Virus record (IMG/VR): IMGVR_UViG_3300028384_001500
Coordinates: 172,653-236,652 of that record
DNA: 64,000 nucleotides
Reading direction: 5' to 3' (one strand)
In this document: positions 27,838 through 62,985 of the stretch, one piece after another
How the letters are laid out: each line of letters starts with the position of its first letter
Position numbering within the stretch: the stretch's first letter is position 1
Notes under the pieces: model-generated
Seen by the model: the letters and a program-made list of their open reading frames with translations, nothing else
What the model was told of the DNA's origin: nothing
The model's database searches: none
Position numbers and translations under genes: made by a program

Positions 27838-27841
27838 TTTA

Positions 27842-29407: not shown

Positions 29408-29408
29408 A

Positions 29409-29744
29409 TTAATCTCCTATACTATTAAATATATCATCAGGAGATACTGTGTCTTGTCTTTCTTGTTCTTTTGCTATAACTTCTGCCAGTTTAATAATTT
29501 GATCATTACATTTTGACATTCTTTCTAGATATTTTGTTGCCAAACCGCCATAAGTTGAATGATTTGCTGCATTACCCGGGATTGTAACCAATAAGTCATT
29601 TAAAAGAATTGCAGCACTTTCTCTATCTTCAATGGCATTTTGATAGGACTCTCTCCACAAAAGCTTTTTTTTGTCTTCAGTATTCTCTAAACTGTCTAAT
29701 AGATCAGCAAATTCTTTTATTTTGTCTTCTTTGTTCTTTTTCAT
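29409..29744 (-). CDS. Hypothetical helical protein
   Basis: 111 aa, TAATG-coupled to the sigma-like gene, helical pattern. Confidence 0.55.
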   Translation of the reverse strand: MKKNKEDKIKEFADLLDSLENTEDKKKLLWRESYQNAIEDRESAAILLNDLLVTIPGNAANHSTYGGLATKYLERMSKCNDQIIKLAEVIAKEQERQDTVSPDDIFNSIGD

Positions 29745-30505
29745 TAAAGTCCCATTTTAAACATCGATGAATATTCATCATTGTTTTTAACTATTTCCCT
29801 ATAATGTTTTCTTACATTCGACATTGCTACTGAGAGCTGCTTTGGATTAAGTCCTGATATTTCCCTTAAATAGACAAAAATAGCTCTCTTGTTTAAAAAT
29901 TCTAGCTCATCTATGTTTTCAAATAGTTTTATCACAGCATGCACACAGAGTTTTTCATTTTCATTTCTAATTTTATTTGAAATAATATTAAGTACTTCAA
30001 ACATTCTTTTTCTGTCTTCCCTTCTTATCATTGTCGACTCTGGAGAAGGCACATAACTATACACTTCTATGCTTTGTTTATCTTTTGAACTTAAACTTGC
30101 AAAATTTTCAAAGCTAACATTTCTTCTCTCTTTTTTGTTTCGCTTGTTTGTTTGAATTATTAAAAAGTTTTTAGCACAAACATTAAAATATGAAAACGCT
30201 TTAGATCCTCTTTCAGGATCAAACTTTTCTAAAGTTTCATATAAAAAAGTAACAGCATCGTTTTTAAGAATACTAAAAGAAGCAGGGTCTCTTGCAAAAC
30301 TATGTATGAAGATTAAGTTTTCAACTAGCTTATTAAAAGAAGGCCTAATTTTTTCTTCATATATTTTATGCTTTTCTTTTACACATAGACTGGATTGGTA
30401 TTCAACAATGGCTTCGTGAGCTTCTTTTCCAAAATAAAGTTTTTTTTGTGTTGATTTTTTGCCTCTTTTAACTGTCTTCTTTTTTAATTTCGCCACTATT
30501 TTCAC
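29744..30505 (-). CDS. Phage sigma factor, gp55-like (late transcription)
   Basis: LEKFDPERGSKAFSYFNVCAKN resembles sigma region 2 (FDP..G..FSTYA) and T4 gp55; sits just upstream of the structural block; may start at GTG 30496. Confidence 0.65.
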   Translation of the reverse strand: MKIVAKLKKKTVKRGKKSTQKKLYFGKEAHEAIVEYQSSLCVKEKHKIYEEKIRPSFNKLVENLIFIHSFARDPASFSILKNDAVTFLYETLEKFDPERGSKAFSYFNVCAKNFLIIQTNKRNKKERRNVSFENFASLSSKDKQSIEVYSYVPSPESTMIRREDRKRMFEVLNIISNKIRNENEKLCVHAVIKLFENIDELEFLNKRAIFVYLREISGLNPKQLSVAMSNVRKHYREIVKNNDEYSSMFKMGL

Positions 30506-30788
30506 TCTCCATATTTTTTGTAATCTTATTAGCTATAACAAGTATTGATCTGTGACAATCTTTAATATCATTTATTACTTGCCTGATTTCAACTGAGTCA
30601 AAAAATATAGGTTTTTGAATAACTTCATTCATACTGCTATATTTTGCATTAAGTATGTCAAGAGACTCTTCAACAGCGTCTTCTATATCAATAATTAGCA
30701 AAGCAAATTGATATAGCTTCCACCCAAGAAACGCAGATAAAGACATTGACAGGCCACACAAAATCATAAGTATGATATTTAAACTCAT
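30468..30788 (-). CDS. Small membrane-anchored coiled-coil protein
   Basis: N-terminal hydrophobic helix (IILMILCGLSMSLSAFLGW) followed by a helical region. Confidence 0.55.
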   Translation of the reverse strand: MSLNIILMILCGLSMSLSAFLGWKLYQFALLIIDIEDAVEESLDILNAKYSSMNEVIQKPIFFDSVEIRQVINDIKDCHRSILVIANKITKNMESENSGEIKKEDS

Positions 30789-31972
30789 TTTTCTAAGTAC
30801 TCGCTCAAAAGATTATTATATTTATTAATAATTGCTGATCTATTGTAATTAAATCTTACATCCTTCATTAACAATTTGGCATTTTGTTTTGCAGATTGGT
30901 AGTCATCTTTTATTTTTCGAATTTCTTTTTTAAAGCTTTCTTCTTTAGGGTTTGCCCATTTAAACCCTTCTTTAAACACCCTATTATCTATTTTAGACTT
31001 TTGTATTTCAACCAAATCGTAATCAACTACTCCAAAATATTTTTTATTTAAAAATTCTAAATGTCCTGACCATCCTGTTGCAATAATTGGGATTCCAGAA
31101 GCAGCAGCCTCTACTAAAGGTAGTCCGTAACCTTCTCCTCTTGTTGCTGTGGCATAGCATTTAACGTAACGATGATTGAAAAGTGCAGACATTTCTTCTT
31201 TTTGCATATTACCATGAACTAGTTTAATTTTAGGGTGGCTAGGTAATTGATGTGCCTCTTTAAAAGATCTTAAGTAATCTATACACATTTTTTTATCTAC
31301 AGTCGACCCTTTTCCAAAACTAGTCTTAAGAATGATTTCTACATTTTCGTCGTCTTTAAATTCTTCACACGTCCATTTAATTGTATTTAGAATATTTTTT
31401 CTATCATTTTCAGGTATTTGACTTGTTAACGTTCCTACCATTAAGACATTAAACTTATTACTAATTTTTTTAAATCTATCATCATTTAGTATTTTATCAT
31501 TAAGACTTTTATTAGTTAAAACTGGATTAAACCACTCTTGTATGACAGAAAGTTTTGTGGTAACTATTCCTGATCTCTTAAGTACATTTTTTGTAAATGT
31601 TGAGGGTACAATTACATGATCCATGCTATTACATTTATCAACCCATTCCGGAGAACACTTGTCAGTTTCTACTAGCGCAGTCACACCAATGTTAAATTTT
31701 CCCAAAGAAGTATCCCACTCATCAGGAAGCTGAACTTGAATTGACATGTCTATTTCATTTTTATTAAAGGGTTTAGACTTAGCCATTATTCTTTTTACTA
31801 TTCCATTTTCTTCTTTTTCATCAATTATCCAACTTGTCCTTCCCCACTGGAGACACTCAACAATCAAGTCTATATCTTCTCTTCCATCTAACCAATCAAA
31901 TATTTGGCGTGAATGTACCCCGTAACCACTATTTGTGAGTAAAGGTGCTCTTAAAAGTATCTTTTTCATCAT
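30785..31972 (-). CDS. Glycosyltransferase, GT4-like (GT-B)
   Basis: SGYGVHSR N-terminal motif; TRGEGYGLPLVEAAASGIPIIATGWSGH (EX7E). Confidence 0.85.
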   Translation of the reverse strand: MMKKILLRAPLLTNSGYGVHSRQIFDWLDGREDIDLIVECLQWGRTSWIIDEKEENGIVKRIMAKSKPFNKNEIDMSIQVQLPDEWDTSLGKFNIGVTALVETDKCSPEWVDKCNSMDHVIVPSTFTKNVLKRSGIVTTKLSVIQEWFNPVLTNKSLNDKILNDDRFKKISNKFNVLMVGTLTSQIPENDRKNILNTIKWTCEEFKDDENVEIILKTSFGKGSTVDKKMCIDYLRSFKEAHQLPSHPKIKLVHGNMQKEEMSALFNHRYVKCYATATRGEGYGLPLVEAAASGIPIIATGWSGHLEFLNKKYFGVVDYDLVEIQKSKIDNRVFKEGFKWANPKEESFKKEIRKIKDDYQSAKQNAKLLMKDVRFNYNRSAIINKYNNLLSEYLEK

Positions 31973-33219
31973 AATTCCTCAATATCCCAGTGCTTTTTAT
32001 TTTTAAAGCGATTAATTGTTTTTATCATTGAGTCATGCCACTTATCAATTGTATCTTGGTATTTAAACTCAAAGTCAGCATAATCTTTTACTTTCTTAGA
32101 AAGTTTAACTTTTTCACTTTCTGGCAGTTGATAAATTTTCATCATTGCATCTGCGAACGTTTCTATCGATGTGTAGTCTTCATAGATATATGGGACAGAT
32201 TGGCTCCCTACAAGCGTTTTAAGTTCTACTTCACAAGCAACACCGTTATGACTTCCGTCTCTATAATCCTCAACTTGTCTAGTAAGCCCACCTGTTTTTG
32301 GTGCAATAATAGGAGTTCCTGTCATCATAGACTCTAGAGTTGCTAACCCAAAGCCTTCAGCGTAAGACGTGTTTATGCAAAAATCAGAAATATTATAAAG
32401 AACGTTCATTTTTTCAAATTCAATTCTGTCTCTAGAAAAGAAAACATGATCTTGAATGTTTAGCATTTCTGTAACTTTAAACAAATTAGGACCTTCATTG
32501 TCGTTAGGTTCAGTATGCATAATTAGCGTTGCTTTTTGATGACCTTCTTTTTCTTGTAGTTTATCTAAAAACGTCTTCCAAGCAACAAGAAGATCAGAGG
32601 GTCTTTTTCTTTTAGCGTTTCTATTGACCCATATTCCAACAAAATGATCTTTTCTATCGATACCTAAAAGTGATGATTTGTGAGTTTGAATATTATCATT
32701 TGACATTTTATAAAATAAGCTATCAGGCAGGGAGTGCGGAATAAAGTTAGTTTTTTCTGGATAAGTGTCTTTTAACATTGTATAGGTCATATGACTATGA
32801 CAGTTAATTAAATCAGTTGCCTGATAATAGCTATCATTAAATTTTGGGTATGGATAATTATCCCAAACATGCCACCAGACAATCGGACAAATTTTTCTAA
32901 CTTCATCTTCAATTTCAAATAGCCAAGTAAAAAATCTTGGATCAGTAAAAATAAAAAGAACATCTGGTTTTTCAGTTGCCAATGTTACCCTAATTAAGTC
33001 TGGACTTCCAAAACCATCTATAGGCTTAATAATAAAGTCTTCGTTAACAACGACTGTTCTATAGTCATTGTGCTTTAAAGCTGCTCCAAACTGTCTAAAA
33101 GACCAGCAGTCTTTTTTTAAAAGACCCTCTATTAAATGCCTTGTTTGTGTACCTACACCACTCGTTGAGAGTGCATGATCTGACAAGACTAAAACTTTAT
33201 ATTTGCCATCTTCTGTCAT
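31969..33219 (-). CDS. Glycosyltransferase, GT4-like (GT-B)
   Basis: SGVGTQTR; NRNAKRKRP; SYAEGFGLATLESMMTGTPIIAPKTGG. Confidence 0.85.
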   Translation of the reverse strand: MTEDGKYKVLVLSDHALSTSGVGTQTRHLIEGLLKKDCWSFRQFGAALKHNDYRTVVVNEDFIIKPIDGFGSPDLIRVTLATEKPDVLFIFTDPRFFTWLFEIEDEVRKICPIVWWHVWDNYPYPKFNDSYYQATDLINCHSHMTYTMLKDTYPEKTNFIPHSLPDSLFYKMSNDNIQTHKSSLLGIDRKDHFVGIWVNRNAKRKRPSDLLVAWKTFLDKLQEKEGHQKATLIMHTEPNDNEGPNLFKVTEMLNIQDHVFFSRDRIEFEKMNVLYNISDFCINTSYAEGFGLATLESMMTGTPIIAPKTGGLTRQVEDYRDGSHNGVACEVELKTLVGSQSVPYIYEDYTSIETFADAMMKIYQLPESEKVKLSKKVKDYADFEFKYQDTIDKWHDSMIKTINRFKNKKHWDIEEL

Positions 33220-33274
33220 AAATAATAATTCCTCTTTCTTGTTATAATATTATATCTAGTAATAAAAAAGTAAA

Positions 33275-34123
33275 CTATTTACAATGTTCAGTTTCAAAAA
33301 ACGGACAAAACTTACAACTATTTCTATTTTTAAGATAGAGGCCCCTTCTAACAGTTTTAATCATGCTTCTCATAAGCTTCATCCCTTTTTCATATGTCTT
33401 AGGCCCTACAGATACTTTTACGATATCACATACTTTTCCGGGTTTGGCACCTCTTTTAAGAAGAACAAATGCACATCGAACATCTTTTAGGTTAATTCCG
33501 TGCTTTTTTGCCCAAAAATGCTTATAGAGGATTAGCTGAGCAGTCATCCCTAAATCTTGTTTTTTATCTCTCCTCCAACCGTATGCTCCTGCCGTTTTCC
33601 AGTCAATGATCCAGTATTCGTGACCTTTGCCGCGCTTTTTAGGAACTTTGAGAATTCCATCAACAAAGCCTTTAAAGTTAAGTGGTTTATCTAATCCTTC
33701 AATAGGCTCGTAGAGCTCCTCTTCTGCTTTAAAACATTCCCACCCAGGAAACTCTTTGTCTAGAAAGCTGTTAACTTCATCCCACATGTTATTGGCCCAC
33801 TGTTCCCAAGTTTCAACCGGTTCGTGTTTATACCAACCAGGCTGCTTTGAATACCACTCCTCGTTCTCAAATCCAGCTTTCTCCCAGCTTTCTTTCATAA
33901 CCCCTAGTATTTTATCACGGTCAATATCACGTCCCTCTAAAAGACTTTCGCAACCTTCGTGCACAGCTGTTCCAAAGTGAAGATATGGACTGTCTTGGAA
34001 AGTGTCAATTTTATCAATATAGACTAATTTGTGTCTGTAGCTACACTCTTTCCATTGTTTAATCTCTGAAAAAGATACGTGGGGTTTTCCGTTAGGAAAG
34101 CTTGGAGTTTTATTATCACTCAT
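33275..34123 (-). CDS. PD-(D/E)XK nuclease, Cas4/AddB-like with a four-Cys cluster
   Basis: SFSEIKQWKECS; GTAVHE; GFVDG...IIDWKT; QLILY; C-terminal CKFCPFFETEHC. Confidence 0.85.
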   Translation of the reverse strand: MSDNKTPSFPNGKPHVSFSEIKQWKECSYRHKLVYIDKIDTFQDSPYLHFGTAVHEGCESLLEGRDIDRDKILGVMKESWEKAGFENEEWYSKQPGWYKHEPVETWEQWANNMWDEVNSFLDKEFPGWECFKAEEELYEPIEGLDKPLNFKGFVDGILKVPKKRGKGHEYWIIDWKTAGAYGWRRDKKQDLGMTAQLILYKHFWAKKHGINLKDVRCAFVLLKRGAKPGKVCDIVKVSVGPKTYEKGMKLMRSMIKTVRRGLYLKNRNSCKFCPFFETEHCK

Positions 34124-34172
34124 TTTTGCTCCTTTTTATTTTCTATAATACTAAGAAATGCAAAAATTTACA

Positions 34173-35045
34173 CTAATCAATGCTTATAGCTCGACCTTTC
34201 ATTTTTTCCCAATCTCTGTTGTTTCTAATTAAGGAGTTGTAATTTTCTACTTCTTGCAAGAACGATAACGAACCAAAGGTGTTGTTGTCCTTGCCAAACT
34301 TAATCATTGCGGATAGATCTTTTGGTAAACAGTGTCCACCAAAACCCATGTCACCATCTGGCCCGGGTACCATCATATGACTATTTCCAATCCTAGGATC
34401 TAAAAGTGCTAAAAATTTAACAGTATTATAATCTAACCCTATTGATTTGCAAATATTGTGCATTTGATTTGCAAAAATTACTTTTGTTGCAAGAAAACAA
34501 TTAATAAAATATTTGCACATTTCAGCTTCATCAGCTTTGACTATTTGTATTGTTACATTTTCCTTAAATGCTTTTTTAAACATTTTTTTAACTTTTTTAC
34601 CTTCAAAACTTACTCGAGTGTTGTCGTAATTAGGTACACCAATTATAATTCTATTTTGATTTTTAAAGTCTTCAAAAGAATTAGCTTCAGTTAAAAACTC
34701 TGGGCTAAATAATACCTTCATATCTTTGTATTTTGAATTAATTCTATTTGTTGTTCCAGGTGGTACAGTTGATTTAATAATTAATATTGGGAACGTTTTT
34801 GTTTTACAGCATTCATTATATACTTTGTCGATTACTGACTCTAAAATTCTCGTATCACAACTTCCATCAATTCTCATTGGTGTAGGTACACATATAAAAA
34901 TAACATTTGAACGATTGCAAACTTCTTTGTGAGTTGAATTGCATTTATCTTTATCTAGATCATATGTTAATATATCATAATGGTTTTTTAATCCTTCCTT
35001 TATTGCAGATCCAACAAAACCTTGCCCAATTATTCCAATATTCAT
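34173..35045 (-). CDS. ugd: UDP-glucose/GDP-mannose dehydrogenase family protein (C-terminally short)
   Basis: GQGFVG Rossmann motif; FSPEFL; AEMCKY; GFGGHCLPKD catalytic-Cys motif; start placed at MNIGII (ATGA overlap). Confidence 0.85.
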   Translation of the reverse strand: MNIGIIGQGFVGSAIKEGLKNHYDILTYDLDKDKCNSTHKEVCNRSNVIFICVPTPMRIDGSCDTRILESVIDKVYNECCKTKTFPILIIKSTVPPGTTNRINSKYKDMKVLFSPEFLTEANSFEDFKNQNRIIIGVPNYDNTRVSFEGKKVKKMFKKAFKENVTIQIVKADEAEMCKYFINCFLATKVIFANQMHNICKSIGLDYNTVKFLALLDPRIGNSHMMVPGPDGDMGFGGHCLPKDLSAMIKFGKDNNTFGSLSFLQEVENYNSLIRNNRDWEKMKGRAISID

Positions 35046-35608
35046 TTTTTTGATTTCCCTATCCAAGGATATATAATTTCTTTATAAACTTTAATATCAT
35101 TTTTAATTAAGAAATTATATATTTTTTCTTCTTTTTTTTCTTCAGTTAAATGTATTAACAAAAAGTTTTCTTTGTCTTTAAAGTAGTCTCTTACTTCCAT
35201 TTCATATTTTTCAAAAGCAATTTTAAGTTGTTTTTCATTAAAAGAGGTTGTTCCGTATACTTTTTCTCTAAGATATCCTTTCATAGTCTCTTTTTTAGGT
35301 TCTGGTCTAATACTAATGTGTTTTTTGTATGACCTTATCCAACTTTCATAGTCTCTAAATGTGTGTATGAAGACAGAATCAAAGGCTTGATCCAACTCTT
35401 TATAAATTGTACAAACCTGTATATCAGACATGCCATCGATTTTGTAAATATTTTTTAGGTTTTCTGTTGATGGTTTTTTTATCGCTTGATTTATAAGATC
35501 ATTGTTGATTGGGTAGTGAAGTATATTTAAGCAGCAAGAATTATTTAAAAAACTAGTCATACTTTTAGTACTTGTTTTACTTAACCCAGTTATAAATACT
35601 TTTTTCAT
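35042..35608 (-). CDS. Sulfotransferase-family P-loop protein
   Basis: VFITGLSKTSTKSM 5'-PSB-like loop; DIQVCTIYKELD; FIHTFRDYESWIRS 3'-PB-like motif. Confidence 0.7.
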   Translation of the reverse strand: MKKVFITGLSKTSTKSMTSFLNNSCCLNILHYPINNDLINQAIKKPSTENLKNIYKIDGMSDIQVCTIYKELDQAFDSVFIHTFRDYESWIRSYKKHISIRPEPKKETMKGYLREKVYGTTSFNEKQLKIAFEKYEMEVRDYFKDKENFLLIHLTEEKKEEKIYNFLIKNDIKVYKEIIYPWIGKSKK

Positions 35609-36259
35609 TTAAAACTTAATTCCTATTAAGACTTCTTTTTTACTTTTATTTATTTCTTGCGGTTTTGTTTTAATCTTTACGGACTTTACATCTCTGTTAA
35701 TTAGATTAACAATATCTTGAACATGACTTACATCTTCACTTTCAACATCTTTTTCAGTTACTTCTTTCATAATGTTGAAATGGGTTGGGTGCCCTTGTCT
35801 AGGCTCTTTTCCGGGAGGTAAGACTATATAAATGCCTAGTTTTGCTATAGATCCGGCAGACTCAAGAAATGAGTCAGGATCGATAATGTGTTCTAAACTA
35901 TGTCTAGAATAAATAATGTCAAATTCATTTTCTTTAAATGTATTAGAAATTTTAGCTGCGTCTAGTCTAATTATTCTAGGGGAAGGGTTGTCGTTAATAT
36001 CTACACCTTTTGCATCGATTCCGGAACTTATGAAAGATTGAAGCTCAGAATCATCTCTACACCCGATGCACAAAACACTTTTAATTTCTTTTTCAAAGAA
36101 TTCTCTCATAAAGCTTATATCTTCACTTCTACTTTTTTCTGACCTGGGGTCTTTAGTCAGTTGTATTTTTTCTTTAGTAGAATGCTTTTTTGACTCTAAC
36201 GTTAAAATGTTTTCAATTCTTACTTTTGATATATTTTTTGTTTCAAATAGTTTTTTCAC
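35609..36259 (-). CDS. Class I SAM-dependent methyltransferase
   Basis: VLCIGCR...GVDI...LDAAKI...FDIIYSRHSLEHIIDP. Confidence 0.75.
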   Translation of the reverse strand: MKKLFETKNISKVRIENILTLESKKHSTKEKIQLTKDPRSEKSRSEDISFMREFFEKEIKSVLCIGCRDDSELQSFISSGIDAKGVDINDNPSPRIIRLDAAKISNTFKENEFDIIYSRHSLEHIIDPDSFLESAGSIAKLGIYIVLPPGKEPRQGHPTHFNIMKEVTEKDVESEDVSHVQDIVNLINRDVKSVKIKTKPQEINKSKKEVLIGIKF

Positions 36260-37151
36260 CTTTTATCCCTTTTTTAGTAGTATCTTTTAAAAAGCTTTTA
36301 TTGTTCTCTTTAAAGAAATTTAGTAATCTTTCACTCTGAAACAGCTGAGGTCTGTTAAATTTTTTATAAGTTTCTACTCTTTGTTCCAGTTTTTTAATTA
36401 CGTCTCCGTGCCATTTAAAATGATGGACAAAAAACCCATGCTTGTCTTTCATCATTTGATAAGCTGATTCGTTAAAGTCTTCTTGGTTATATTCTTTGTT
36501 GCTGTTGTTAGGTTCGCCTAAGATCTTTATAGATAGATCATTATTTGCTAAACATTGATTGCCGCCGTGAGAATAATTAACTTTGTCTCTTAGTTGATTG
36601 TGAATCTGGCCTGATCCGTTATTTGCTCTTAAGTATCCTTTGTAAGCCATTAATTTTACACCAGATATTCCAATTAATTTTGTTAAGTTAATTTTCTTCG
36701 GAAACTGGTTTTGTATATTATCATCACTAGATATTTTTTTAATTGAACCGTCTGAAGTTATTCTATCTATTAAATACCCTTGAATGGCATTAACACCAAT
36801 ATTGTCACAGTGATTTAAAATTTCACTTACGCCGGCAGGAAATTCATGGAATTCATCTGAGTCGGGATGAATTACCCAATCTTGGGACGTGACATGTTTG
36901 TTTAACATCATATGAACTCTTTGCCATTTTTCTTCGCTTTCGTATTCATAACACCAAATGTCTTTAGGAAAAATATTGTACTTGTTTAGTATTTTTAATC
37001 CTTTCTCTAAATTATCTCTATCTTTAAAAACATTTAATACAAAAAGAAAATTTTCAGGATTTATTCCTAGGTTCATGTAATGCTTAATAAAATGATCTAA
37101 TAAACCTAAGTCAAAGTCTAAACTAAAACAAGTTGCTAAATATACTTTCAT
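36243..37151 (-). CDS. Glycosyltransferase, GT2-like (GT-A)
   Basis: LLDHFIKHYMNLGI...WVIHPDSDEF (DxD). Confidence 0.7.
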   Translation of the reverse strand: MKVYLATCFSLDFDLGLLDHFIKHYMNLGINPENFLFVLNVFKDRDNLEKGLKILNKYNIFPKDIWCYEYESEEKWQRVHMMLNKHVTSQDWVIHPDSDEFHEFPAGVSEILNHCDNIGVNAIQGYLIDRITSDGSIKKISSDDNIQNQFPKKINLTKLIGISGVKLMAYKGYLRANNGSGQIHNQLRDKVNYSHGGNQCLANNDLSIKILGEPNNSNKEYNQEDFNESAYQMMKDKHGFFVHHFKWHGDVIKKLEQRVETYKKFNRPQLFQSERLLNFFKENNKSFLKDTTKKGIKGEKTI

Positions 37152-38104
37152 CTTCTAACCTCTTTTAAAATATCGTAATATGAATTAACACATTTTACAA
37201 AATGCGAAACATTTTTGCCTTTTTTTCTATTGCTAAATTCTTTTTGTATTGCTATTTCTTTTGTCTTGCTGAAATCCACGTTAGGAGGTTTATAAAGCGC
37301 ACAAGGCTTCATATCCCATTCATCTTCTAAAATCATAGTGCCGTTATCGACAATTTCATGTGTGCCACCCGTAGAAGAACAAATAATCTTACATCCAGCT
37401 GCCTGTGCGTCAATAACTACATTAGGACAATGATCTAAATAAGCTAAATGTACAAAAGTAGAAGATCTATGATAAAGTGCTAAAAGATTTTGGTATGACA
37501 ATTCCCCTAAAACGTATATTCTTTCACTCATAGATAAGTACTGTTTTGCTTCATCCATTCCTAAACTTCCCGCTATAGCAAAAACAGCTTCAGGAGGTGA
37601 ATGATCTAAAAAGTATAATATGTTTTGTAAAAGTCTTTTATGCGGCCTCCAAGAAGCTGCACACGACCAAACTTCTTTTTCTTTATTCCACGGCCACTGC
37701 ATTGTTTTGTAAGATTCAATTACTATTGGATGATTTACAATGTCAGGATCAGCAGCATTATGAACAACATGACCATTTTTATGAGGGCCAAACCAAGACT
37801 CAGTTAGTTTTTTATTAAAGTTTGACTGAAATATCACTGCATCAGCATTGTTATAAGCAAATCTAATTGGTGTGTTCTGTTGTTTAAAGTCCTGTTCGGA
37901 ATTAAAGTATATTCCATCTAACCTAAGGACCATAGGTTTAACCTTATGGGCTTGCTGTTGAATTACACAGAATTCAACGTCAGCATCTTCTTGACTACTT
38001 AAAGAAACCTTTTTGTCATTTACAAGTTTTGAAAAAAGCGTTCTTGTGAACTTATTAGGTCCGCTATTAGATTGCGGATTGAAATTGTGAGTAAATACTT
38101 TCAT
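37148..38104 (-). CDS. Glycosyltransferase, GT4-like
   Basis: SGPNKF; ASWRPHKRL; DHCPNVVIDAQAAGCKIICSSTGGTHE. Confidence 0.8.
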   Translation of the reverse strand: MKVFTHNFNPQSNSGPNKFTRTLFSKLVNDKKVSLSSQEDADVEFCVIQQQAHKVKPMVLRLDGIYFNSEQDFKQQNTPIRFAYNNADAVIFQSNFNKKLTESWFGPHKNGHVVHNAADPDIVNHPIVIESYKTMQWPWNKEKEVWSCAASWRPHKRLLQNILYFLDHSPPEAVFAIAGSLGMDEAKQYLSMSERIYVLGELSYQNLLALYHRSSTFVHLAYLDHCPNVVIDAQAAGCKIICSSTGGTHEIVDNGTMILEDEWDMKPCALYKPPNVDFSKTKEIAIQKEFSNRKKGKNVSHFVKCVNSYYDILKEVRR

Positions 38105-38439
38105 CTTTTATAATCATCTTTGAGTCTTACGACATCGTCTAGTTCAGGAGTACTTACTTCAAATACTTGTGTGAGAATTCCTTCTGGTGATCCAAATCGA
38201 TGGACTTGCCCAGGTTTAACATGATATGAAGTGCCCGGATTTAAAATTAATTTATTGTCATCTTTATCGCTTGTCCAGACGATTAGTTTACCCATTGTGA
38301 CATATATAGTTTCTTCTTTCTTTTGATGATACTGGAGACTTAATCGTTGTCCCGGTTTAATTGTTAAAACTTTACCTACGTATTTATCAGTTTCTGCCCA
38401 AACCTCTTCATGCCCCCATGGTTTTTCAACTTTTCTCAT
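38101..38439 (-). CDS. Cupin, mannose-6-phosphate isomerase type II C-terminal-like
   Basis: KPWGHEE...LTIKPGQRLSLQYHQKKEETIYV...HVKPGQVHRF...DVVRLKDDYKR. Confidence 0.85.
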   Translation of the reverse strand: MRKVEKPWGHEEVWAETDKYVGKVLTIKPGQRLSLQYHQKKEETIYVTMGKLIVWTSDKDDNKLILNPGTSYHVKPGQVHRFGSPEGILTQVFEVSTPELDDVVRLKDDYKR

Positions 38440-39158
38440 TCTATTAACCCTCTTGATCTTACTAGCCTAATTGTGTCCATTTGATTTTTTTCTTTTTCCG
38501 GTCTAAATTTTAAAGAGTTTGAATTAATTCTGTACAGATAACATATTTCATTTAAGAATTTTCTATCTTTTGCAAGAAGTAACATAGGAAGATAAAGCGC
38601 TTGATCGTAACCTCTTTCAAACCAGTTACCATCTAAGTCTTTAAAGTTTTCTTCTTTAATTTTTTTAAATAAATTCACTTTAAAAGTTTTAAGATGTGAG
38701 CTTACCCATGGATAGTGATATGGATTAATTTTTTCTGGTAACTCTCTAGAGATATTCATACCGTTTATATCCCAGGAATGTGCTGTCCAAAGGGCATCTA
38801 ATTGAGGATTGTTGTCATACTCTTTAAGAATAAGATCAACAGTGTTTTCATTGCACAAGGCATCGTCGCCATCAAGAACTGCTATAATTTGCTCTGAAAA
38901 ATCATTATATCCGCTCAGATAATCATAAATACCCTTTAACGCAAATTTCTTATGATCATGATTAATAACAGTTACTCTTTCTTTTTCATCTGACAAAACA
39001 ATTTTATTAGCAATTTCAAAAGTATCATCATTTGACATGTCATTTAAAATGACCCATTCCCAATTTGGATTTAATTGCTCTTTTAGTGACTCATAACATT
39101 CTTTTAAATGAAAAGAAGCATTATAAGTCGGCGTAACAAAACATACTGTTTTTCTCAT
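38436..39158 (-). CDS. Glycosyltransferase, GT2
   Basis: VTPTYNA...WEWVILNDMSNDDT...LDGDD. Confidence 0.85.
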   Translation of the reverse strand: MRKTVCFVTPTYNASFHLKECYESLKEQLNPNWEWVILNDMSNDDTFEIANKIVLSDEKERVTVINHDHKKFALKGIYDYLSGYNDFSEQIIAVLDGDDALCNENTVDLILKEYDNNPQLDALWTAHSWDINGMNISRELPEKINPYHYPWVSSHLKTFKVNLFKKIKEENFKDLDGNWFERGYDQALYLPMLLLAKDRKFLNEICYLYRINSNSLKFRPEKEKNQMDTIRLVRSRGLIE

Positions 39159-39458
39159 TTATCTTCCTACTTTTGTTTTAGTTGAATCTTTAAGTGATCT
39201 AACTGATTCTTGAATAAAATCTCTTCTACTTTCTAACTCAGAAACGCTTCTTAAAATATGCAATGTATCTTCTTCTAAAGTTGCTACTATTGTTAAATCT
39301 GCTTTAAATGCGTCTTCTTCTAACTGTTCTACTAATCGATTAAGTTTTTCAGAAAGTGTTCTGCACTTTGTCCTAAGTTCAACGTCGCATTTGTTAAAAG
39401 ATTGCTGGCTTTGTATAAAAACCTGTGAAAAAACTTGGAATAAATTTTCTTGTTCCAT
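39159..39458 (-). CDS. Hypothetical coiled-coil protein
   Basis: 99 aa, abuts both neighbours in the operon, GGAG SD, heptad-like pattern. Confidence 0.55.
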   Translation of the reverse strand: MEQENLFQVFSQVFIQSQQSFNKCDVELRTKCRTLSEKLNRLVEQLEEDAFKADLTIVATLEEDTLHILRSVSELESRRDFIQESVRSLKDSTKTKVGR

Positions 39459-39459
39459 A

Positions 39460-41385
39460 TTAACTCCTTTTCTGTAACCAGCCTTTGATTACTTCTGGGT
39501 GATCCGACTCTACAAAATACCAATTTGTAGGTTTACTAAAGTCAACTCTACTGTGGAATATCCAGCCACCCATTTCATTATCTAATCTTTTTGCCATATT
39601 TACAATTTCTTTTTCTGAAACTTCTGACCATGGTTTATTAAAAAACTTATTGTTCTCTGCATTATCAACAACTTGCTTATTATACAAGCTAGCGTGAAAC
39701 TTGCTCCAAAAATCTCTATAGTTGTATATTTTTCTTTGAATGTCAAACCATGAATAATGATGAACTGACGGTAATTCTTTTAGTGCAGCGTTAATAAAGT
39801 TAACGTAAACATCTAGACTAGAATTTTTAAAATTTTCGTCTGTCAATATTTTCTGTCTTATTTGTTCATGTTGTGGTGTATAAAAATTCATATTAGGGAT
39901 AGGTTGATAATTATCAGTGTGAACGTAGTCACATCCGTCTGATCCTGCAGAGTATACATTTCCGTTTTCATCGTATCTTCTGTGTGCTGCAGGTATATCA
40001 TGCGTTATATGTGTATCATTTCTAGATAATCTCCATTTCCATGGGTGTACATCTAGTCTTACTTTGTTTTGTTTTCCCCAATAGTCTATGACAGGCAGGC
40101 AAACAACTTTAACAGCTTTAGGAATTTGCCTGGCTAGCTTTTTAACTTTTTTATAGTCACTTTCATGAACAATTTCATCAACATCAGACTGCCAACACCA
40201 GTCTCCCGTGCATAAAGATCTTGCAACTGCTTTTTGCTGACCATCGAACAAAGCAAATCGATAATGATCCCAGTCACGATTAACTTGGTACACTCTAAGT
40301 TTTTCTTCCTTTTCTGACCATTTTTGAAGTTGCTCCCAAGTCCCGTCTTTTGACCCACCGTCGACTACAACAACTTCATCACAAAAACCCAATAAAGATT
40401 TAATAGATTCTCTCCATGGGTAGTCAGCGTCTATTACATCTTTTGTTGTTGTATAACCGCTAACAGTAACTTCTCTTTCAAAAAAAGATGTTATAACACT
40501 CCAAAAAGTATCGTGGCGAGAAAGTAGGTAGAAAAGAAGTTCGTCTGGCGAGTCACTTTGACTATTTTTAAACCAGCCTTCTTCTGAGTGCTGAACATTT
40601 TCATTTATAGATAATTCTAATCCTAAGAGCTTAGCTTCAATAGTTGTTCTAGGGCATGTATCACCGCCAAGAGGATGAAATGACAATCCTTTGAATTCTG
40701 ATAACTTTCTTAATAAATCATAATAAGGTAAACCTGAAAGTATTTCTGCTTCATCCTGGAGAATGTCTGTCACTACTTTTTTACTCTCAACAATTCCTTT
40801 TATCCAGCTATTACCGTCTATGATTGCCCATTTATTATTATTTGATTTTCTATCTGCCCTTAGCCTGGTCATAAATTCTAAGTCTTCTAAGCTAAAAATT
40901 GAACTTAAGACTGTTTGTTTGTTTTCTTTTAAAAATGGAAATCTTTGGTGATATATTTCAGATTGTTTCTTTGACATCCAAAAAATATGTTCTGACCCAT
41001 GCAAAAACGCAGAAATGATTTTTCCTAACTGGCTATTTTGACAGTCACAATCTTCGCCCGTCTGTCGTTTGTGCAGATCAATTGATCGGTATTGACAAAA
41101 TTTATAGTCATATTCAACAATTGCGTAGTTTAAATTTGCAACAATCATAGGTATTAACTCATGATTCATTGATCGATAATTAAAAAATACCCAAAACTTA
41201 TTAACACCTTGTTGAATTAATTCTTTTGTTACTTCCGATGATTTTAGTTTAAAAGTCGTATAAGGAGAAGTTTCAAAAAGAGCCTCTGTTGATTTTTCAG
41301 CTCCTCCTCCATATTCATCTAAAAAAGCGTCTGCAACAAAAACGACGCTAGAATCTAAAAAATTATCCATACAGTAATACCTCAT
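39460..41385 (-). CDS. Two-domain glycosyltransferase (GT-B-like N-terminus fused to a GT2 C-terminus)
   Basis: YGGGAEKST and DTCPRTTIEAKLLG in the N-half; CDEVVVVDGGSKDGT and WQSDVDE in the C-half. Confidence 0.8.
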   Translation of the reverse strand: MRYYCMDNFLDSSVVFVADAFLDEYGGGAEKSTEALFETSPYTTFKLKSSEVTKELIQQGVNKFWVFFNYRSMNHELIPMIVANLNYAIVEYDYKFCQYRSIDLHKRQTGEDCDCQNSQLGKIISAFLHGSEHIFWMSKKQSEIYHQRFPFLKENKQTVLSSIFSLEDLEFMTRLRADRKSNNNKWAIIDGNSWIKGIVESKKVVTDILQDEAEILSGLPYYDLLRKLSEFKGLSFHPLGGDTCPRTTIEAKLLGLELSINENVQHSEEGWFKNSQSDSPDELLFYLLSRHDTFWSVITSFFEREVTVSGYTTTKDVIDADYPWRESIKSLLGFCDEVVVVDGGSKDGTWEQLQKWSEKEEKLRVYQVNRDWDHYRFALFDGQQKAVARSLCTGDWCWQSDVDEIVHESDYKKVKKLARQIPKAVKVVCLPVIDYWGKQNKVRLDVHPWKWRLSRNDTHITHDIPAAHRRYDENGNVYSAGSDGCDYVHTDNYQPIPNMNFYTPQHEQIRQKILTDENFKNSSLDVYVNFINAALKELPSVHHYSWFDIQRKIYNYRDFWSKFHASLYNKQVVDNAENNKFFNKPWSEVSEKEIVNMAKRLDNEMGGWIFHSRVDFSKPTNWYFVESDHPEVIKGWLQKRS

Positions 41386-41425: not shown

Positions 41426-41878
41426 TTATACTATATAAGATGCTTTTATGTCGATATTAATTGTTCCTCCTGCAGCAGTAACTGCAGATTGAACTGTTGC
41501 TTGATTAACTGTATTTGTACTTGATGGGTTAACTAAGCCGGTTTTAAAATAAACGTCAATAATAATTTTGTCTGATGAAAGGGCTCTGGTTGTTTCTCTA
41601 ATATATGGGACTATATTACTGCCTAGTGAGTCGTAAGAATCAATGTTAATGTAAGGCATAGCTGTTGTTTTTTCATCAAGTACTAGAGAAGTAGTAAAAG
41701 TAACATAACCATTGCCGCTTGCGTTGTTTACATCAGAACTTATAAAAGAAAAACTTTCTTTAATTTCATACACAGTACCAACATCATCAGGTTCAGATTC
41801 AACCACTAAAGAGTGTTTTGGCTTTCTTCTAATAAATGAATATATTTTTCTATTTCTGTTAAGATCTTTATAAGCCAT
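41426..41878 (-). CDS. Hypothetical protein, possibly virion-associated
   Basis: 150 aa, beta-rich, S/T-rich. Confidence 0.5.
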   Translation of the reverse strand: MAYKDLNRNRKIYSFIRRKPKHSLVVESEPDDVGTVYEIKESFSFISSDVNNASGNGYVTFTTSLVLDEKTTAMPYINIDSYDSLGSNIVPYIRETTRALSSDKIIIDVYFKTGLVNPSSTNTVNQATVQSAVTAAGGTINIDIKASYIV

Positions 41879-43314: not shown

Positions 43315-43560
43315 ATGAAATGTTTTAATTATAACAAAAAGAATAATACAAATTGCGCAAACAAAGATTGCAGATACTGGATTAATTGTAACAAATCAAA
43401 TAATTGTTGTATTTTACTCCTAAAGAATAAAGAATTCAATGAAGACAAAACAACTTTACAAGATATTGGTGATATATTTAAAGTTACAAGAATGAGAATA
43501 TGTCAGATAGAGAAAAATGCAATTAAAAAGTTAAAAGACAAAATTGGTAACTTGGTATAA
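43315..43560 (+). CDS. Small Cys-rich protein with a sigma70 region 4 HTH
   Basis: TTLQDIGDIFKVTRMRICQIEKNAIKKLK matches region 4.2 (TLEEIG..F.VTRERIRQIE..AL.KL); N-terminal C-x4-C, C and CC residues. Confidence 0.8.
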   Translation: MKCFNYNKKNNTNCANKDCRYWINCNKSNNCCILLLKNKEFNEDKTTLQDIGDIFKVTRMRICQIEKNAIKKLKDKIGNLV

Positions 43561-43609: not shown

Positions 43610-43801
43610 TTAAGATTTGCTAGCTTCTAAAGACGTTTTAACAACAGCTGATGCCATTTTCTTAGCTTCTCTTAGGCCTTTTCTGGCTCTAATTCCTGCT
43701 GATTTATTACCTTGAGCATTTTTAACAACGTCTGTTTGCAAAGCCTCAATTAAAACTTTAAGTTCTTCAAATTGGGAAATTAATTCTTCGTTTAGTGACA
43801 T
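43610..43801 (-). CDS. Histone H1-like Hc1/HctA-family protein
   Basis: GNKSAGIRARK...SLEASK matches the GNKAAG.RARK core of Hc1-like proteins; GGAGG SD. Confidence 0.8.
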   Translation of the reverse strand: MSLNEELISQFEELKVLIEALQTDVVKNAQGNKSAGIRARKGLREAKKMASAVVKTSLEASKS

Positions 43802-47946: not shown

Positions 47947-47971
47947 ATATTGTTACTCCTGCTTCTCTATA

Positions 47972-48000: not shown

Positions 48001-48001
48001 A

Positions 48002-62984: not shown

Positions 62985-62985
62985 G

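What the first reader, a model, noticed from the sequence alone, without database searches (positions are those of the whole stretch)
30785..41385. 10.6-kb phage glycosylation and glycan-decoration cluster
Seen: six GT ORFs with seven GT domains (GT4-like and GT2-like, one fusion), a UDP-sugar dehydrogenase, an M6P-isomerase-like cupin, a methyltransferase and a sulfotransferase-like protein, mostly coupled by overlapping stop/start codons. Established: some phages and giant viruses glycosylate capsids or DNA. Inference: synthesis of a uronic-acid-containing, methylated and possibly sulfated glycan for virion coating, DNA protection or host-surface remodelling; no export or polymerase gene is visible, which fits a cytoplasmic acceptor.
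Basis: partly seen in the sequence, partly recalled or inferred. Interest (0 to 1): 0.6.

Follow-up and report, generated by a model that had tools for sequence, protein, structure and literature searches.

The report
Variable sugar-coat gene island, marine jumbo phage
An uncultured marine jumbo phage carries a 10.6-kb block of soluble sugar-chain-building enzymes whose ends are shared by its relatives while the middle differs in each of them, much as in bacterial O-antigen loci; what the sugars are attached to is not known.

Summary
Window 30785-41385 carries 13 minus-strand genes, mostly translationally coupled. There are six glycosyltransferase (GT) ORFs with seven GT domains, a cupin, a methyltransferase, a Sulfotransfer_4 protein and a UGDH-like dehydrogenase.

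Corrections:
- The dehydrogenase is a 290-aa form without the UDP-binding C-terminal domain, so uronic acid is unproven. This short form is a large metagenomic family, not a broken gene.
- One GT (36243-37151) is only probable.

The 641-aa protein is a true GT-B plus GT-A fusion. The AF2 model has pLDDT 93, the N-half matches GT-B folds at Z 19, and the gene is split in two in some relatives.

The host genome is a 236.6-kb IMG/VR jumbo myovirus. It has distant cultured kin: Flavobacterium phage immuto, Microcystis phage Mel-JY01 and Rhodothermus phage RM378.

Across 15 related loci the left block (fusion, GT2, cupin, GT4) and the right block (nuclease, GT4, GT4, tail genes) are conserved. The centre is replaced wholesale.

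No membrane, export, polymerase or priming enzyme occurs in the 236 kb.

Best reading, at about 0.45: phage-built glycans on virion proteins. The main rival is host-surface remodelling. DNA glycosylation is disfavoured. This is a new variant of a known kind.

The parts
39460..41385 (-). 641-aa fusion glycosyltransferase: N-half compact GT-B (GT4-like) domain, residues about 10-305; C-half GT-A (GT2) domain with an invariant DxD (D401, D403). This is the left anchor of the island.
   Evidence: Pfam GT2 hit at residues 326-445. AF2 model with pLDDT 93, pTM 0.87. VIA-wide: Z 19.4 to 6kih, 19.0 to BshA, 18.5 to PglA for residues 11-306. Foldseek best matches for the C-half are SunS/ThuS, RmlT and TarS. 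Invariant residues. Split into two ORFs in L009 and L010. More than 2000 full-length homologue clusters.
39159..39458 (-). 99-aa ORF of unknown function, coiled-coil-like, found in close relatives only.
   Evidence: No Pfam hit above cut-off. 71-96% identical in L002, L003, L004, L021 and L023.
38436..39158 (-). 240-aa GT2 (GT-A) glycosyltransferase, part of the conserved left block.
   Evidence: PF00535, 49.8 bits. DGD motif at residue 96. Present in 11 of 15 related loci at 29-90% identity.
38101..38439 (-). 112-aa single-domain cupin of the type-II phosphomannose-isomerase C-terminal kind.
   Evidence: PF01050, 54.1 bits, and Cupin_2. TIGR01479 C-terminal region, residues 357-467. Conserved in close relatives.
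37148..38104 (-). 318-aa GT4 glycosyltransferase, last gene of the conserved left block.
   Evidence: PF00534, 46.8 bits. Present in 11 of 15 loci at 33-79% identity.
36243..37151 (-). 302-aa probable GT-A glycosyltransferase (GT2_4/GT92-like). Variable cassette gene.
   Evidence: PF13704, 27.1 bits against a 27.5 cut-off. ESM Atlas neighbours are viral GT2-like and GT92 clusters at 0.97-0.98. DSD motif at residue 97. Homologues only in L010 and L022.
35609..36259 (-). 216-aa class-I SAM methyltransferase. Variable cassette gene.
   Evidence: PF13489, 37.6 bits, and PF08241, 26.7 bits. Of the 15 loci, only a weak 25% match in L027.
35042..35608 (-). 188-aa Sulfotransfer_4-family protein. Rare variable cassette gene.
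   Evidence: PF17784, 46.2 bits against a 22.8 cut-off. Only 2 homologues in the 5.8-billion word search. ESM Atlas neighbours are Sulfotransfer_4 clusters, mostly viral. Absent from all 15 related loci.
34173..35045 (-). 290-aa short UDP-glucose/GDP-mannose-dehydrogenase-family protein. It keeps the NAD-binding and central domains, the GxGxxG motif and the GGHCLPKD catalytic-Cys motif. It has no C-terminal UDP-binding domain.
   Evidence: PF03721 and PF00984 only. PDB alignment ends near residue 300 of 390-490. Sequence. No PF03720 in the genome. The 120 best homologues are all 277-305 aa with the same two domains.
33275..34123 (-). 282-aa PD-(D/E)XK nuclease, set off by the only two intergenic gaps. 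First gene of the conserved right block; probably a recombination or replication exonuclease rather than a glycan enzyme.
   Evidence: PF12705, 73.4 bits. PHROG exonuclease families. Same position before the GT4 pair in L005-L007, L009, L026, L027, immuto and Mel-JY01.
31969..33219 (-). 416-aa GT4 glycosyltransferase with an EX7E motif. Deeply conserved right-anchor gene.
   Evidence: PF00534, 51.7 bits. EGFGLATLE motif. tblastn hits to immuto, Mel-JY01, RM378 and LR756508 at 27-31% identity.
30785..31972 (-). 395-aa GT4 glycosyltransferase with an EX7E motif. Partner of the 416-aa GT4, with a 4-nt overlap.
   Evidence: PF20706, 32.8 bits, and PF00534, 30.3 bits. EGYGLPLVE motif. Homologue directly after the first GT4 in immuto, Mel-JY01 and RM378.
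41426..41878 (-). 150-aa Ser/Thr-rich beta-rich protein just upstream. It has a conserved basic N-terminal motif, and its relatives give weak H_lectin hits. It is a possible virion surface protein or acceptor; this is speculative.
   Evidence: Alignment A3. H_lectin weak or faint in L022 and L023. The AF2 model was unusable at pLDDT 46.
26701..30788 (-). Downstream genes conserved with the GT4 pair (106 aa with an N-terminal TM helix, then 253, 111, 521 and 378 aa). They lead into the baseplate/tail module.
   Evidence: Syntenic in L007, L009 and L027. PHROG baseplate-wedge hits for 24331-26175 and 26177-26668, and a tape-measure-like hit for 26701-27837.

Best explanation
The region is a phage-encoded glycan-assembly island made only of soluble proteins and so presumably cytoplasmic. 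It lies inside the late/structural part of an uncultured marine jumbo myovirus.

Shown:
- Seven GT domains, a methyltransferase, a sulfotransferase-family protein, a cupin and a short UGDH-like dehydrogenase are encoded as translationally coupled genes.
- A left block (GT-B/GT-A fusion, GT2, cupin, GT4) and a right block (nuclease, GT4, GT4) are conserved among relatives.
- The genes between the two blocks are exchanged wholesale, as in O-antigen or capsule loci.

Inferred:
- The conserved GTs attach and build an inner core on an acceptor that is common to these phages.
- The cassette enzymes add lineage-specific outer sugars and decorations. In this phage those decorations are methyl and probably sulfate. 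In relatives they include deoxy and amino sugars, nonulosonic acid or Kdo, fucose-type GT11 and GT6 additions, and radical-SAM modifications.
- Host pools would supply NDP-sugars, SAM and PAPS.

Most likely acceptor: one or more virion surface proteins, which would give the particle a variable 'serotype-like' glycan coat.
For: - Enzyme content and coupling.
- Fusion fold and natural split.
- No TM helix in any cluster protein. No polytopic membrane ORF, no Bac_transf and no NTP_transferase in 236 kb.
- Conserved flanks with a replaced centre across 15 loci. For example L021 has PrkA at 98%, PhoH at 91% and GT2 at 90% identity, yet entirely different genes after the GT4.
- Cassette repertoire in relatives: GMD and epimerases, DegT, NeuB, DAHP/Kdo8P synthase, CTP_transf_3, GT6, GT11, GT15, GT25, radical SAM/SPASM, several methyltransferase families, Asn synthase, Sulfotransfer_3.
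- L007 has the minimal form: the fusion is followed directly by nuclease-GT4-GT4.
- The GT4-GT4 pair is kept in phages of Rhodothermus, Flavobacterium and Microcystis. These hosts have very different envelopes, which argues for a phage-borne acceptor.
- The island is flanked by tail/baseplate genes. In relatives it is also flanked by lectin-like, LamG 'virion structural protein' and large variable ORFs.
- DNA of the relative immuto shows no glyco-nucleoside.
- Precedent: mycobacteriophage capsid and tail-tube glycosylation (Freeman et al. 2023, as cited in PMC12619734), and clade-specific virion glycosylation clusters of giant viruses (PMC10117803).
Against: - No acceptor has been identified and no glycoprotein data exist for any relative.
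- GT4 and GT2 enzymes that work on undecaprenyl-linked intermediates are also soluble or peripheral. The missing membrane genes therefore do not exclude use of host Wzx/Wzy or ABC machinery.
- The published reading of similar polymorphic GT clusters in jumbo cyanophages is host-surface modification (PMC7824862).
- The record is only about 77% complete, so absences are provisional.
- The UGDH-like protein lacks its UDP-binding domain, and the sulfotransferase is known only by family membership.
- Fold matches of the fusion's GT-A half to peptide GTs (SunS/ThuS) are not specific, because wall-teichoic-acid GTs score similarly.
Confidence: 0.45

Rival explanations
1. Host-surface remodelling. The soluble GTs and tailoring enzymes act at the inner face of the membrane on host undecaprenyl- or lipid-A-core-linked intermediates. 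Host flippases, polymerases and ligases export the altered O-antigen or capsule. The changed surface blocks superinfection or stops progeny from re-adsorbing to infected cells and debris.
For: - This is the published interpretation of polymorphic multi-GT clusters in jumbo cyanophages (PMC7824862).
- The cassette enzymes are those typical of O-antigen and capsule loci: NeuB, Kdo8P synthase, GT11, GT6, DegT, GMD.
- The polymorphism between close relatives mirrors host serotype diversity.
- The GT2 gives a weak hit to a GtrB-like PHROG.
Against: - No priming phosphoglycosyltransferase, flippase, polymerase, ligase or any polytopic membrane protein in 236 kb.
- The 240-aa GT2 lacks the C-terminal TM helices of GtrB.
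- The anchor GTs are conserved across phages whose hosts belong to three or more phyla and across more than 2000 metagenomic clusters. A strain-specific host acceptor fits this poorly, although a universal one such as Und-PP-GlcNAc is possible.
- The island sits in the structural gene block.
Confidence: 0.3
2. The enzymes build a glycoconjugate that is neither on virion proteins nor on the host surface. Examples are a glycolipid, a glycosylated small molecule or secondary metabolite, or glycosylation of a non-structural phage or host cytoplasmic protein as a takeover or anti-defence function.
For: - The nearest folds of the fusion's GT-B half include small-molecule GTs: BshA, sucrose-phosphate synthase, tetrahydrobiopterin GT and SenB.
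- Both right-anchor GT4s pass the Pfam 'GT4-conflict' model.
- Radical-SAM/SPASM, aldolase and Asn-synthase genes in related cassettes also occur in metabolite pathways.
- Iyer et al. propose a metabolite role for a second cyanophage cluster.
Against: - Seven GT domains and O-antigen-like cassette swapping point to an oligo- or polysaccharide rather than a small glycoside.
- No carrier, NRPS/PKS or export gene is present.
- GT-B fold neighbours are not diagnostic of the acceptor.
Confidence: 0.15
3. DNA hypermodification. The GTs glycosylate phage DNA bases to evade restriction, and the adjacent PD-(D/E)XK nuclease discriminates modified from unmodified DNA.
For: - A nuclease is conserved next to the GT4 pair.
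- T4 alpha-glucosyltransferase appears among the GT-B fold matches at Z about 16.
- Phage GTs that add diverse glycans to DNA are known (bioRxiv 10.1101/2023.12.21.572611).
Against: - No Thymidylat_synt/hydroxymethylase, Tet_JBP or TGT/DpdA family in 236 kb. The Tet_JBP control rang nowhere, so that result is weak.
- In Flavobacterium phage immuto, which carries nuclease-GT4-GT4 plus further GTs, digested DNA gave dA, dC and dT plus fdPreQ1 replacing dG. No glycosylated nucleoside was reported.
- Seven GT domains with methyl and sulfate tailoring far exceed known DNA glycans.
- The T4 enzyme match is no better than dozens of other GT-B enzymes.
Confidence: 0.04

Closest known systems
Polymorphic multi-glycosyltransferase ('LPS / capsular polysaccharide modification') clusters of jumbo cyanophages (Iyer, Anantharaman, Krishnan, Burroughs and Aravind 2021, PMC7824862)
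   Same: - Several paralogous GTs from different families, together with sugar-tailoring enzymes.
- Sporadic and polymorphic gene content even between related phages.
- Carried by large aquatic myoviruses.
   Different: - A different phage lineage.
- The island here has two conserved GT anchors, including a GT-B/GT-A fusion, around a swapped centre.
- It lies between PhoH and the tail module.
- No nucleotidyltransferase or sugar kinase in this genome.
- The function of the cyanophage clusters is itself only predicted.
Mycobacteriophage virion O-glycosylation (Che8, Corndog, Myrna; Freeman et al. 2023, Cell Host Microbe; cited in PMC12619734)
   Same: Phage-encoded soluble GTs, with methyltransferases in some phages, acting in the cytoplasm without export genes. 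This is the mechanism proposed here.
   Different: - Those phages carry far fewer GT genes; seven GT domains are found here.
- Those are siphoviruses of Actinobacteria.
- Their acceptor sites (C-termini of capsid and tail-tube proteins) are experimentally known. Here no acceptor is known.
- No sequence relationship was tested.
Clade-specific virion glycosylation gene clusters of giant viruses (Megavirinae fibril glycans, PMC10117803; chlorovirus capsid glycans, PMC9614988)
   Same: - Virus-encoded cytoplasmic pathways for rare bacterial-like sugars.
- Multi-domain GTs.
- Sugar methylation.
- Cluster content that differs by clade.
   Different: Those are eukaryotic viruses with unrelated capsids. 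This is similarity of logic, not demonstrated homology.
Bacterial O-antigen and capsule loci
   Same: - Conserved flanks with a hypervariable centre.
- The same enzyme families: GT2, GT4, GT6, GT11, GMD, DegT, NeuB, Kdo8P synthase and CMP-transferases.
   Different: No initiating transferase, Wzx, Wzy, ABC transporter or ligase, and the carrier is a lytic-type jumbo phage.
[quoted passage not shown]
   Same: - Homologous nuclease-GT4-GT4 in immuto and Mel-JY01, and GT4-GT4 in RM378, in the same order at 26-31% identity.
- The baseplate wedge protein is homologous at 31% in immuto and Mel-JY01.
   Different: - Those genomes are 130-190 kb.
- Extra GTs, transaminases and a methyltransferase lie after the GT4 pair rather than before the nuclease.
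- The fusion GT gave no tblastn hit in the 50,697 phage records.
'Moraphages', large aquatic phages with four core glycosyltransferase orthogroups (Perez-Hernandez et al. 2025, PMC12619734)
   Same: - Aquatic, 200-307 kb.
- Histone H1-like Hc1 (PF07432) gene, found here at 43610-43801.
- Several core GTs.
- A Rhodothermus phage used among the reference phages in that paper's capsid tree.
- Bacteroidota hosts are predicted for moraphages; the nearest cultured kin of this phage infects Flavobacterium.
   Different: - No moraphage sequence was available to compare, so membership is untested.
- No DnaK here.
- That paper lists the GTs but does not analyse the island's architecture or variability.

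Membership tests
GT4 / GT-B retaining glycosyltransferases (Glycos_transf_1) | Pfam Glycos_transf_1 or Glyco_trans_1_4 domain above the gathering score | tested here: met
   30785-31972 scores 30.3 bits (and GT4-conflict 32.8). 31969-33219 scores 51.7. 37148-38104 scores 46.8. The cut-off is 26.4.
GT4 / GT-B retaining glycosyltransferases (Glycos_transf_1) | EX7E nucleotide-sugar-binding motif in the C-terminal Rossmann domain | tested here: met
   EGYGLPLVE (395-aa protein) and EGFGLATLE (416-aa protein). The strict motif was not found in the 318-aa GT4. The N-half of the fusion keeps an invariant E250 in a PRxVIEA context.
GT4 / GT-B retaining glycosyltransferases (Glycos_transf_1) | Two-Rossmann GT-B fold (N-half of the 641-aa fusion, which has no Pfam hit) | tested here: met
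   AF2 pLDDT 93. Z 19.4, rmsd 3.4 over 275 aligned residues to 6kih. More than 40 GT-B enzymes score Z above 14 over residues 10-305.
GT2 / GT-A inverting glycosyltransferases | Pfam Glycos_transf_2 domain above cut-off and a DxD motif | tested here: met
   38436-39158 scores 49.8 bits and has DGD at residue 96. The fusion C-half scores 36.7-38.9 bits and has invariant D401 and D403. 36243-37151 is borderline only: 27.1 against 27.5 bits.
UDP-glucose/GDP-mannose dehydrogenase family | N-terminal NAD-binding Rossmann domain, and a central domain with the catalytic Cys (GGxCxxKD) | tested here: met
   PF03721 at 85 bits and PF00984 at 79 bits. GQGFVG and GGHCLPKD motifs in the sequence.
UDP-glucose/GDP-mannose dehydrogenase family | C-terminal UDP/GDP-sugar-binding domain (PF03720) | tested here: not met
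   The protein ends at residue 290. No PF03720 at E <= 0.1 anywhere in 236 kb. TIGR03026 scores 187.9 bits, just under its 189.8 cut-off, and covers only positions 68-295 of 413. All 120 best homologues share the short form. It is therefore a relative of UGDH, not a demonstrated UDP-sugar 6-dehydrogenase.
Sulfotransferases (Pfam Sulfotransfer_4, PF17784) | Family domain above the gathering score | tested here: met
   46.2 bits against 22.8, covering residues 3-156 of the protein and positions 1-187 of 215 in the profile. ESM Atlas neighbours are 88-100% PF17784.
Sulfotransferases (Pfam Sulfotransfer_4, PF17784) | PAPS-binding 5'-PSB and 3'-PB motifs, and sulfotransfer activity | tested here: inconclusive
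   By eye, an N-terminal GLSKTSTKS segment and an RD...S segment resemble the two motifs (sequence). No structure-based check was possible: there is no PDB sequence match and only 2 homologues for an alignment. Activity is not testable here. No APS kinase in the genome.
Phage virion-glycosylation systems (mycobacteriophage type) | Phage-encoded soluble GTs without export machinery | tested here: met
Phage virion-glycosylation systems (mycobacteriophage type) | Glycans covalently bound to capsid or tail proteins | not testable with these tools
   This needs virions. No cultured member of this clade is known, and no glycoproteomic data were found for immuto, Mel-JY01 or RM378.
Jumbo-phage polysaccharide-modification clusters (Iyer et al. 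2021) | Several paralogous GT families plus tailoring enzymes, polymorphic between related phages | tested here: met
Jumbo-phage polysaccharide-modification clusters (Iyer et al. 2021) | Alteration of host LPS or capsule | not testable with these tools
   This is a prediction in the source paper too.
Phage DNA-glycosylation systems (T4 aGT/bGT; MT-TET-GT) | An enzyme that makes a hydroxymethylated (or otherwise glycosylatable) base | tested here: not met
   No Thymidylat_synt, Tet_JBP (the control was silent, so this is weak) or TGT in the 236 kb. The record is about 77% complete.
Moraphage lineage (PMC12619734) | Aquatic phage over 200 kb with an Hc1 gene and several core GTs; placement by TerL, MCP and PolB trees | tested here: inconclusive
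   Size, habitat, Hc1 and the GT content fit. No moraphage sequences were held, so no tree or AAI could be made.

The most novel reading that the evidence does not exclude
An abundant, cosmopolitan clade of marine jumbo phages coats its virions with a glycan built entirely by its own cytoplasmic enzymes. A conserved inner core would be made by the GT-B/GT-A fusion and the ancient GT4-GT4 pair. A hypervariable outer part would be exchanged between phages as gene cassettes. In this phage the outer part would be methylated and sulfated; in others it would carry nonulosonic acids, Kdo, fucose or blood-group-like GT6/GT11 additions. That would amount to phage 'serotypes'. As a side claim, the widespread 280-300-aa UGDH-like family without a UDP-binding domain would be a new kind of sugar dehydrogenase that acts on something other than a free UDP-sugar.
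Probability: 0.3. Interest if true: 0.8.

Novelty: new variant of a known kind. Interest (0 to 1): 0.55.

Why it matters
Virus-built glycans are well documented for giant eukaryotic viruses and for a few mycobacteriophages. For large aquatic phages, multi-GT clusters have only been noted and assigned by guesswork to host-surface modification.

This locus gives a defined and widespread architecture. The fusion GT has more than 2000 protein clusters at 90% identity, including Tara Oceans samples. The island has fixed anchors and a swapped centre, so it can be surveyed like an O-antigen locus.

A cultured distant relative, Flavobacterium phage immuto, keeps the GT4-GT4 core, so the acceptor question is testable at the bench.

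If the glycan sits on virions, it would add a diversifying surface layer to marine phage ecology, with possible effects on adsorption, particle stickiness, grazing and host recognition. It would also be the first sulfated phage glycan that I know of.

The short UGDH-like family is an enzymological puzzle of its own.

Tried and rejected
- Megablast of the whole cluster against 50,697 phage records gave no match. tblastn of the fusion protein there also gave no match.
- PDB sequence searches gave nothing useful for the N-half of the fusion, the sulfotransferase-like protein or the 302-aa GT.
- hhalign of the 302-aa protein against the fusion profile gave probability 2%, with only a short shared VHH-x-W stretch. 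This does not support the GT call. That call rests on near-threshold Pfam and the Atlas neighbours.
- The AF2 model of the 150-aa upstream protein had pLDDT 46 and was unusable. Its lectin-like nature rests only on weak or faint precomputed H_lectin hits in relatives.
- I intended complex prediction for the conserved GT4-416/GT4-395 pair, to test a GtfA/GtfB-like heteromer. I make no binding claim.
There is no expression or read-level evidence.
- The idea that the short UGDH is a truncation caused by insertion of the nuclease gene is rejected. The 42%-identical L005 homologue is also 295 aa, and the 120 best homologues listed, of 7,994 metagenomic hits, have the same length and the same two domains.
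- The idea that the missing C-terminal domain is encoded elsewhere is rejected for the recovered 236 kb.
- A DnaK search, as a moraphage marker, found nothing.
- The promoter and terminator scans found no more sites than shuffled sequence, so I make no operon-boundary claim beyond the two intergenic gaps.

Full report
**What is in the sequence.** The window is the last 64 kb of a single-contig IMG/VR virus record of 236,652 bp. The record has 35% G+C, is classed as linear, and CheckV estimates it at about 77% complete. Nearly all genes run on the minus strand.

Between 30785 and 41385 there are 13 consecutive minus-strand ORFs. In transcription order, with Pfam results:
- 641-aa protein with a GT2 domain in its C-half
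- 99-aa unknown ORF
- 240-aa GT2
- 112-aa PMI-type cupin
- 318-aa GT4
- 302-aa Glyco_tranf_2_4-like protein (27.1 bits against a 27.5 cut-off)
- 216-aa class-I methyltransferase
- 188-aa Sulfotransfer_4 protein (46.2 bits against a 22.8 cut-off)
- UGDH-like protein of 290 aa from its ATG
- 282-aa PD-(D/E)XK nuclease
- GT4 of 416 aa
- GT4 of 395 aa

The 13th ORF in the range (39332-39523, 63 aa, TTG start) lies across the end of the 641-aa gene and the start of the 99-aa gene. I do not count it as a gene.

Junctions are six ATGA overlaps, one 17-nt overlap and three gaps of 0-1 nt. Only two real intergenic gaps exist (49 and 55 nt), on either side of the nuclease.

**The fusion.** The N-half of the 641-aa protein has no Pfam, NCBIfam or PDB sequence match. 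An AF2 model built on 71 homologues is confident, with pLDDT 93 and pTM 0.87.
- Residues 10-305 form a compact GT-B fold. The best match is sucrose-phosphate synthase 6kih at Z 19.4, rmsd 3.4 over 275 residues. BshA, PglA, WaaG, PimA and dozens more score Z above 14.
- The C-half is GT-A. Its best Foldseek matches are the glycocin S-glycosyltransferases SunS and ThuS, then RmlT, TarS and GalNAc-T4.
- A DxD (D401, D403) and many other residues are invariant.
- In two related loci (L009, L010) the two halves are separate adjacent ORFs. The protein is thus a genuine fusion, and the count of seven GT domains stands, with one domain (the 302-aa protein) only probable.

**The dehydrogenase.** The UGDH-like protein keeps the GxGxxG NAD motif and the GGHCLPKD catalytic-cysteine motif. 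It stops where the UDP-sugar-binding C-terminal domain of solved UGDHs begins.
- No PF03720 domain exists anywhere in the 236 kb.
- This is not decay. A 42%-identical homologue in L005 is 295 aa.
- The word search returned 7,994 homologues. The best 120 are all 277-305 aa with only the two domains, and many lie on long viral-type contigs.
- In L026 and L027 the gene sits in the same kind of island, near the nuclease.
- It is a family in its own right with an untested substrate.

**Sulfation and sugar supply.**
- The sulfotransferase-like protein passes its Pfam threshold. Its language-model neighbours are Sulfotransfer_4 clusters, mostly from tailed phages.
- It has only two close homologues in 5.8 billion proteins and is absent from all 15 related loci.
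- The genome has no APS kinase and no sugar nucleotidyltransferase.
- Two extended-SDR NDP-sugar epimerase/dehydratase-type genes lie far away, at about 67 and 80 kb of the record.

**Which phage.**
- Downstream genes hit baseplate-wedge, tail and tape-measure PHROGs.
- The 416-aa GT4 also hits these phages, plus Rhodothermus phage RM378.
- Relatives come from Tara Oceans and other metagenomes.
- The window carries an Hc1 histone-H1-like gene and a sigma-70 region-4 gene next to PhoH. No sequences were available for comparison, so membership is untested.

**Architecture across relatives.** I compared the window's proteins with 15 related loci.
- The left block (fusion, GT2, GT4, and in close kin the 99-aa ORF and the cupin) is present wherever the locus covers it. 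Identities range from 29% to 96%.
- The right block (nuclease, GT4-416, GT4-395, then the 106-, 253-, 111- and 521-aa genes that lead into the tail module) is likewise conserved.
- The genes between the two blocks are replaced wholesale.
- The nearest long relative, L021, has PrkA at 98%, PhoH at 91%, GT2 at 90% and cupin at 92% identity. After the GT4 it carries an FkbM methyltransferase, a hexapeptide acetyltransferase, DegT, an SDR, CTP_transf_3 and another methyltransferase instead.
- Other versions carry GMD and epimerases, NeuB, Kdo8P-synthase-type DAHP_synth_1, GT6, GT11, GT15, GT25, radical-SAM/SPASM enzymes, Asn synthase, an HpcH aldolase, PIG-L and Sulfotransfer_3.
- L007 shows the minimal form: the fusion is followed directly by nuclease-GT4-GT4.
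- The window's own cassette (GT2_4-like protein, methyltransferase, sulfotransferase, short UGDH) is rare. The stretch 34-36 kb, which holds most of it, has the lowest G+C of the region at 0.29.

**Deep conservation of the right anchor.**
- In immuto and Mel-JY01 the order nuclease, GT4-416-like, GT4-395-like is kept. It is followed there by further GTs, transaminases and a methyltransferase.
- RM378 keeps the two GT4s.
- The nuclease is probably an ordinary recombination or replication exonuclease that marks a module boundary. I found nothing that ties it to glycan chemistry.

**Where the glycan goes.**
- No protein of the island has a TM helix.
- In the whole record only three ORFs have three or more hydrophobic segments, and none is polytopic.
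- There is no Bac_transf priming enzyme.
- The phage therefore encodes no flippase, polymerase, ligase or transporter, with the caveat that about a quarter of the genome may be missing.

Evidence on DNA glycosylation:
- No thymidylate-synthase/hydroxymethylase, TET/JBP or TGT family was found.
- LC-UV-MS of immuto DNA found dA, dC and dT, with fdPreQ1 replacing dG, and no glyco-nucleoside (bioRxiv 10.1101/2023.04.13.536721).

Evidence for a phage-borne acceptor:
- The GT4 pair is retained in phages of Rhodothermus, Flavobacterium, Microcystis and this marine clade, whose envelopes differ greatly.
- The fusion GT is conserved in more than 2000 clusters.
- The island lies within the structural region.
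- In relatives it is preceded by a small Ser/Thr-rich, weakly H-lectin-like protein, by large variable ORFs, and by a LamG protein that matches a 'virion structural protein' PHROG.

I therefore favour virion-protein glycosylation at about 0.45. The mechanism would resemble that of mycobacteriophages (Freeman et al. 2023, cited). The cluster logic would resemble that of Megavirinae and chloroviruses (PMC10117803, PMC9614988).

**Rivals.**
- The published reading of similar polymorphic GT clusters in jumbo cyanophages is host-surface polysaccharide modification against superinfection (PMC7824862). It remains credible at about 0.3. GT2 and GT4 enzymes of lipid-linked pathways are also soluble, a universal intermediate could serve as the conserved acceptor, and the host could supply export.
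- A non-surface glycoconjugate, or a cytoplasmic protein target, cannot be excluded (about 0.15).
- DNA glycosylation is unlikely (about 0.04).

**What could not be done.**
- The model of the 150-aa upstream protein was too poor to use.

**Verdict.**
The cluster is a real phage glycan-assembly island without export genes. Uronic acid is doubtful, DNA protection is unlikely, and the acceptor is unresolved.
- It is not a new kind of system, because polymorphic GT clusters in jumbo phages and virion glycosylation are both known.
- It is a well-defined new variant: a widespread island with fixed anchors and a swappable centre, a GT-B/GT-A fusion, a phage sulfotransferase and a domain-lacking UGDH family.
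- It has a cultured distant relative in which the acceptor can be determined.

Noticed in passing
window 46006-50489 (-): Phage-encoded PrkA (646 aa), SpoVR (467 aa) and DUF444 (390 aa) triad, the YeaG/YcgB/YeaH-type stress-kinase module. All three score very strongly in Pfam. PrkA is 81-98% identical in relatives. Its role in a phage is unexplained.
   Followed up: partly
window 43610-43801 (-) and 43315-43560 (+): A 63-aa histone H1-like Hc1 gene (E 2e-13) next to an 81-aa sigma-70 region-4 protein on the opposite strand. The same pair occurs in all close relatives. Hc1 is a trait reported for 'moraphages'.
   Followed up: partly
window 34173-35045 (-); L026, L027, L005: The UGDH-like family of 277-305 aa without the UDP-binding domain is large (7,994 word-search hits; the best 120 all have this form). 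It recurs in these phage islands. One member is filed under a Candidatus Poribacteria MAG, possibly a mis-binned viral contig.
   Followed up: partly
G000:C1:36680-37040 and 1283-2204 (outside the window): A phage-encoded tmRNA (tag ANNNAHFESVALAA) and three tRNAs (Lys-UUU, Met-CAU, Leu-UAA).
   Followed up: no
window 58000-64000: G+C rises to 0.41-0.44, against 0.29-0.36 in the rest of the window. The ORFs tested there (707, 211, 185, 173, 152 and 128 aa) have no significant Pfam hit. This could be a differently sourced segment or simply the end of the contig.
   Followed up: no
window 52196-53128 (-) and 53177-54004 (+): A UvdE UV-damage endonuclease (222 bits) and a trypsin-like peptidase on the opposite strand.
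   Followed up: no
G000:C1:64400-70700 and 80100-83300 (L015, L016): Fe/Mn superoxide dismutase, DHH/DHHA1 phosphoesterase, thymidine kinase, a phosphoribosyltransferase, a C92 amidase and two extended-SDR NDP-sugar epimerase/dehydratase-type genes, far from the island.
   Followed up: partly
L001 8025-9938, L002 7419-9938, L003 6875-9940, L022 6780-9932, L023 2655-5107: In relatives, large and highly variable ORFs (564-1050 aa, no family hit) sit between the small lectin-like gene and the fusion GT. In L023 there is also a LamG protein matching a 'virion structural protein' PHROG. The window lacks these ORFs.
   Followed up: partly
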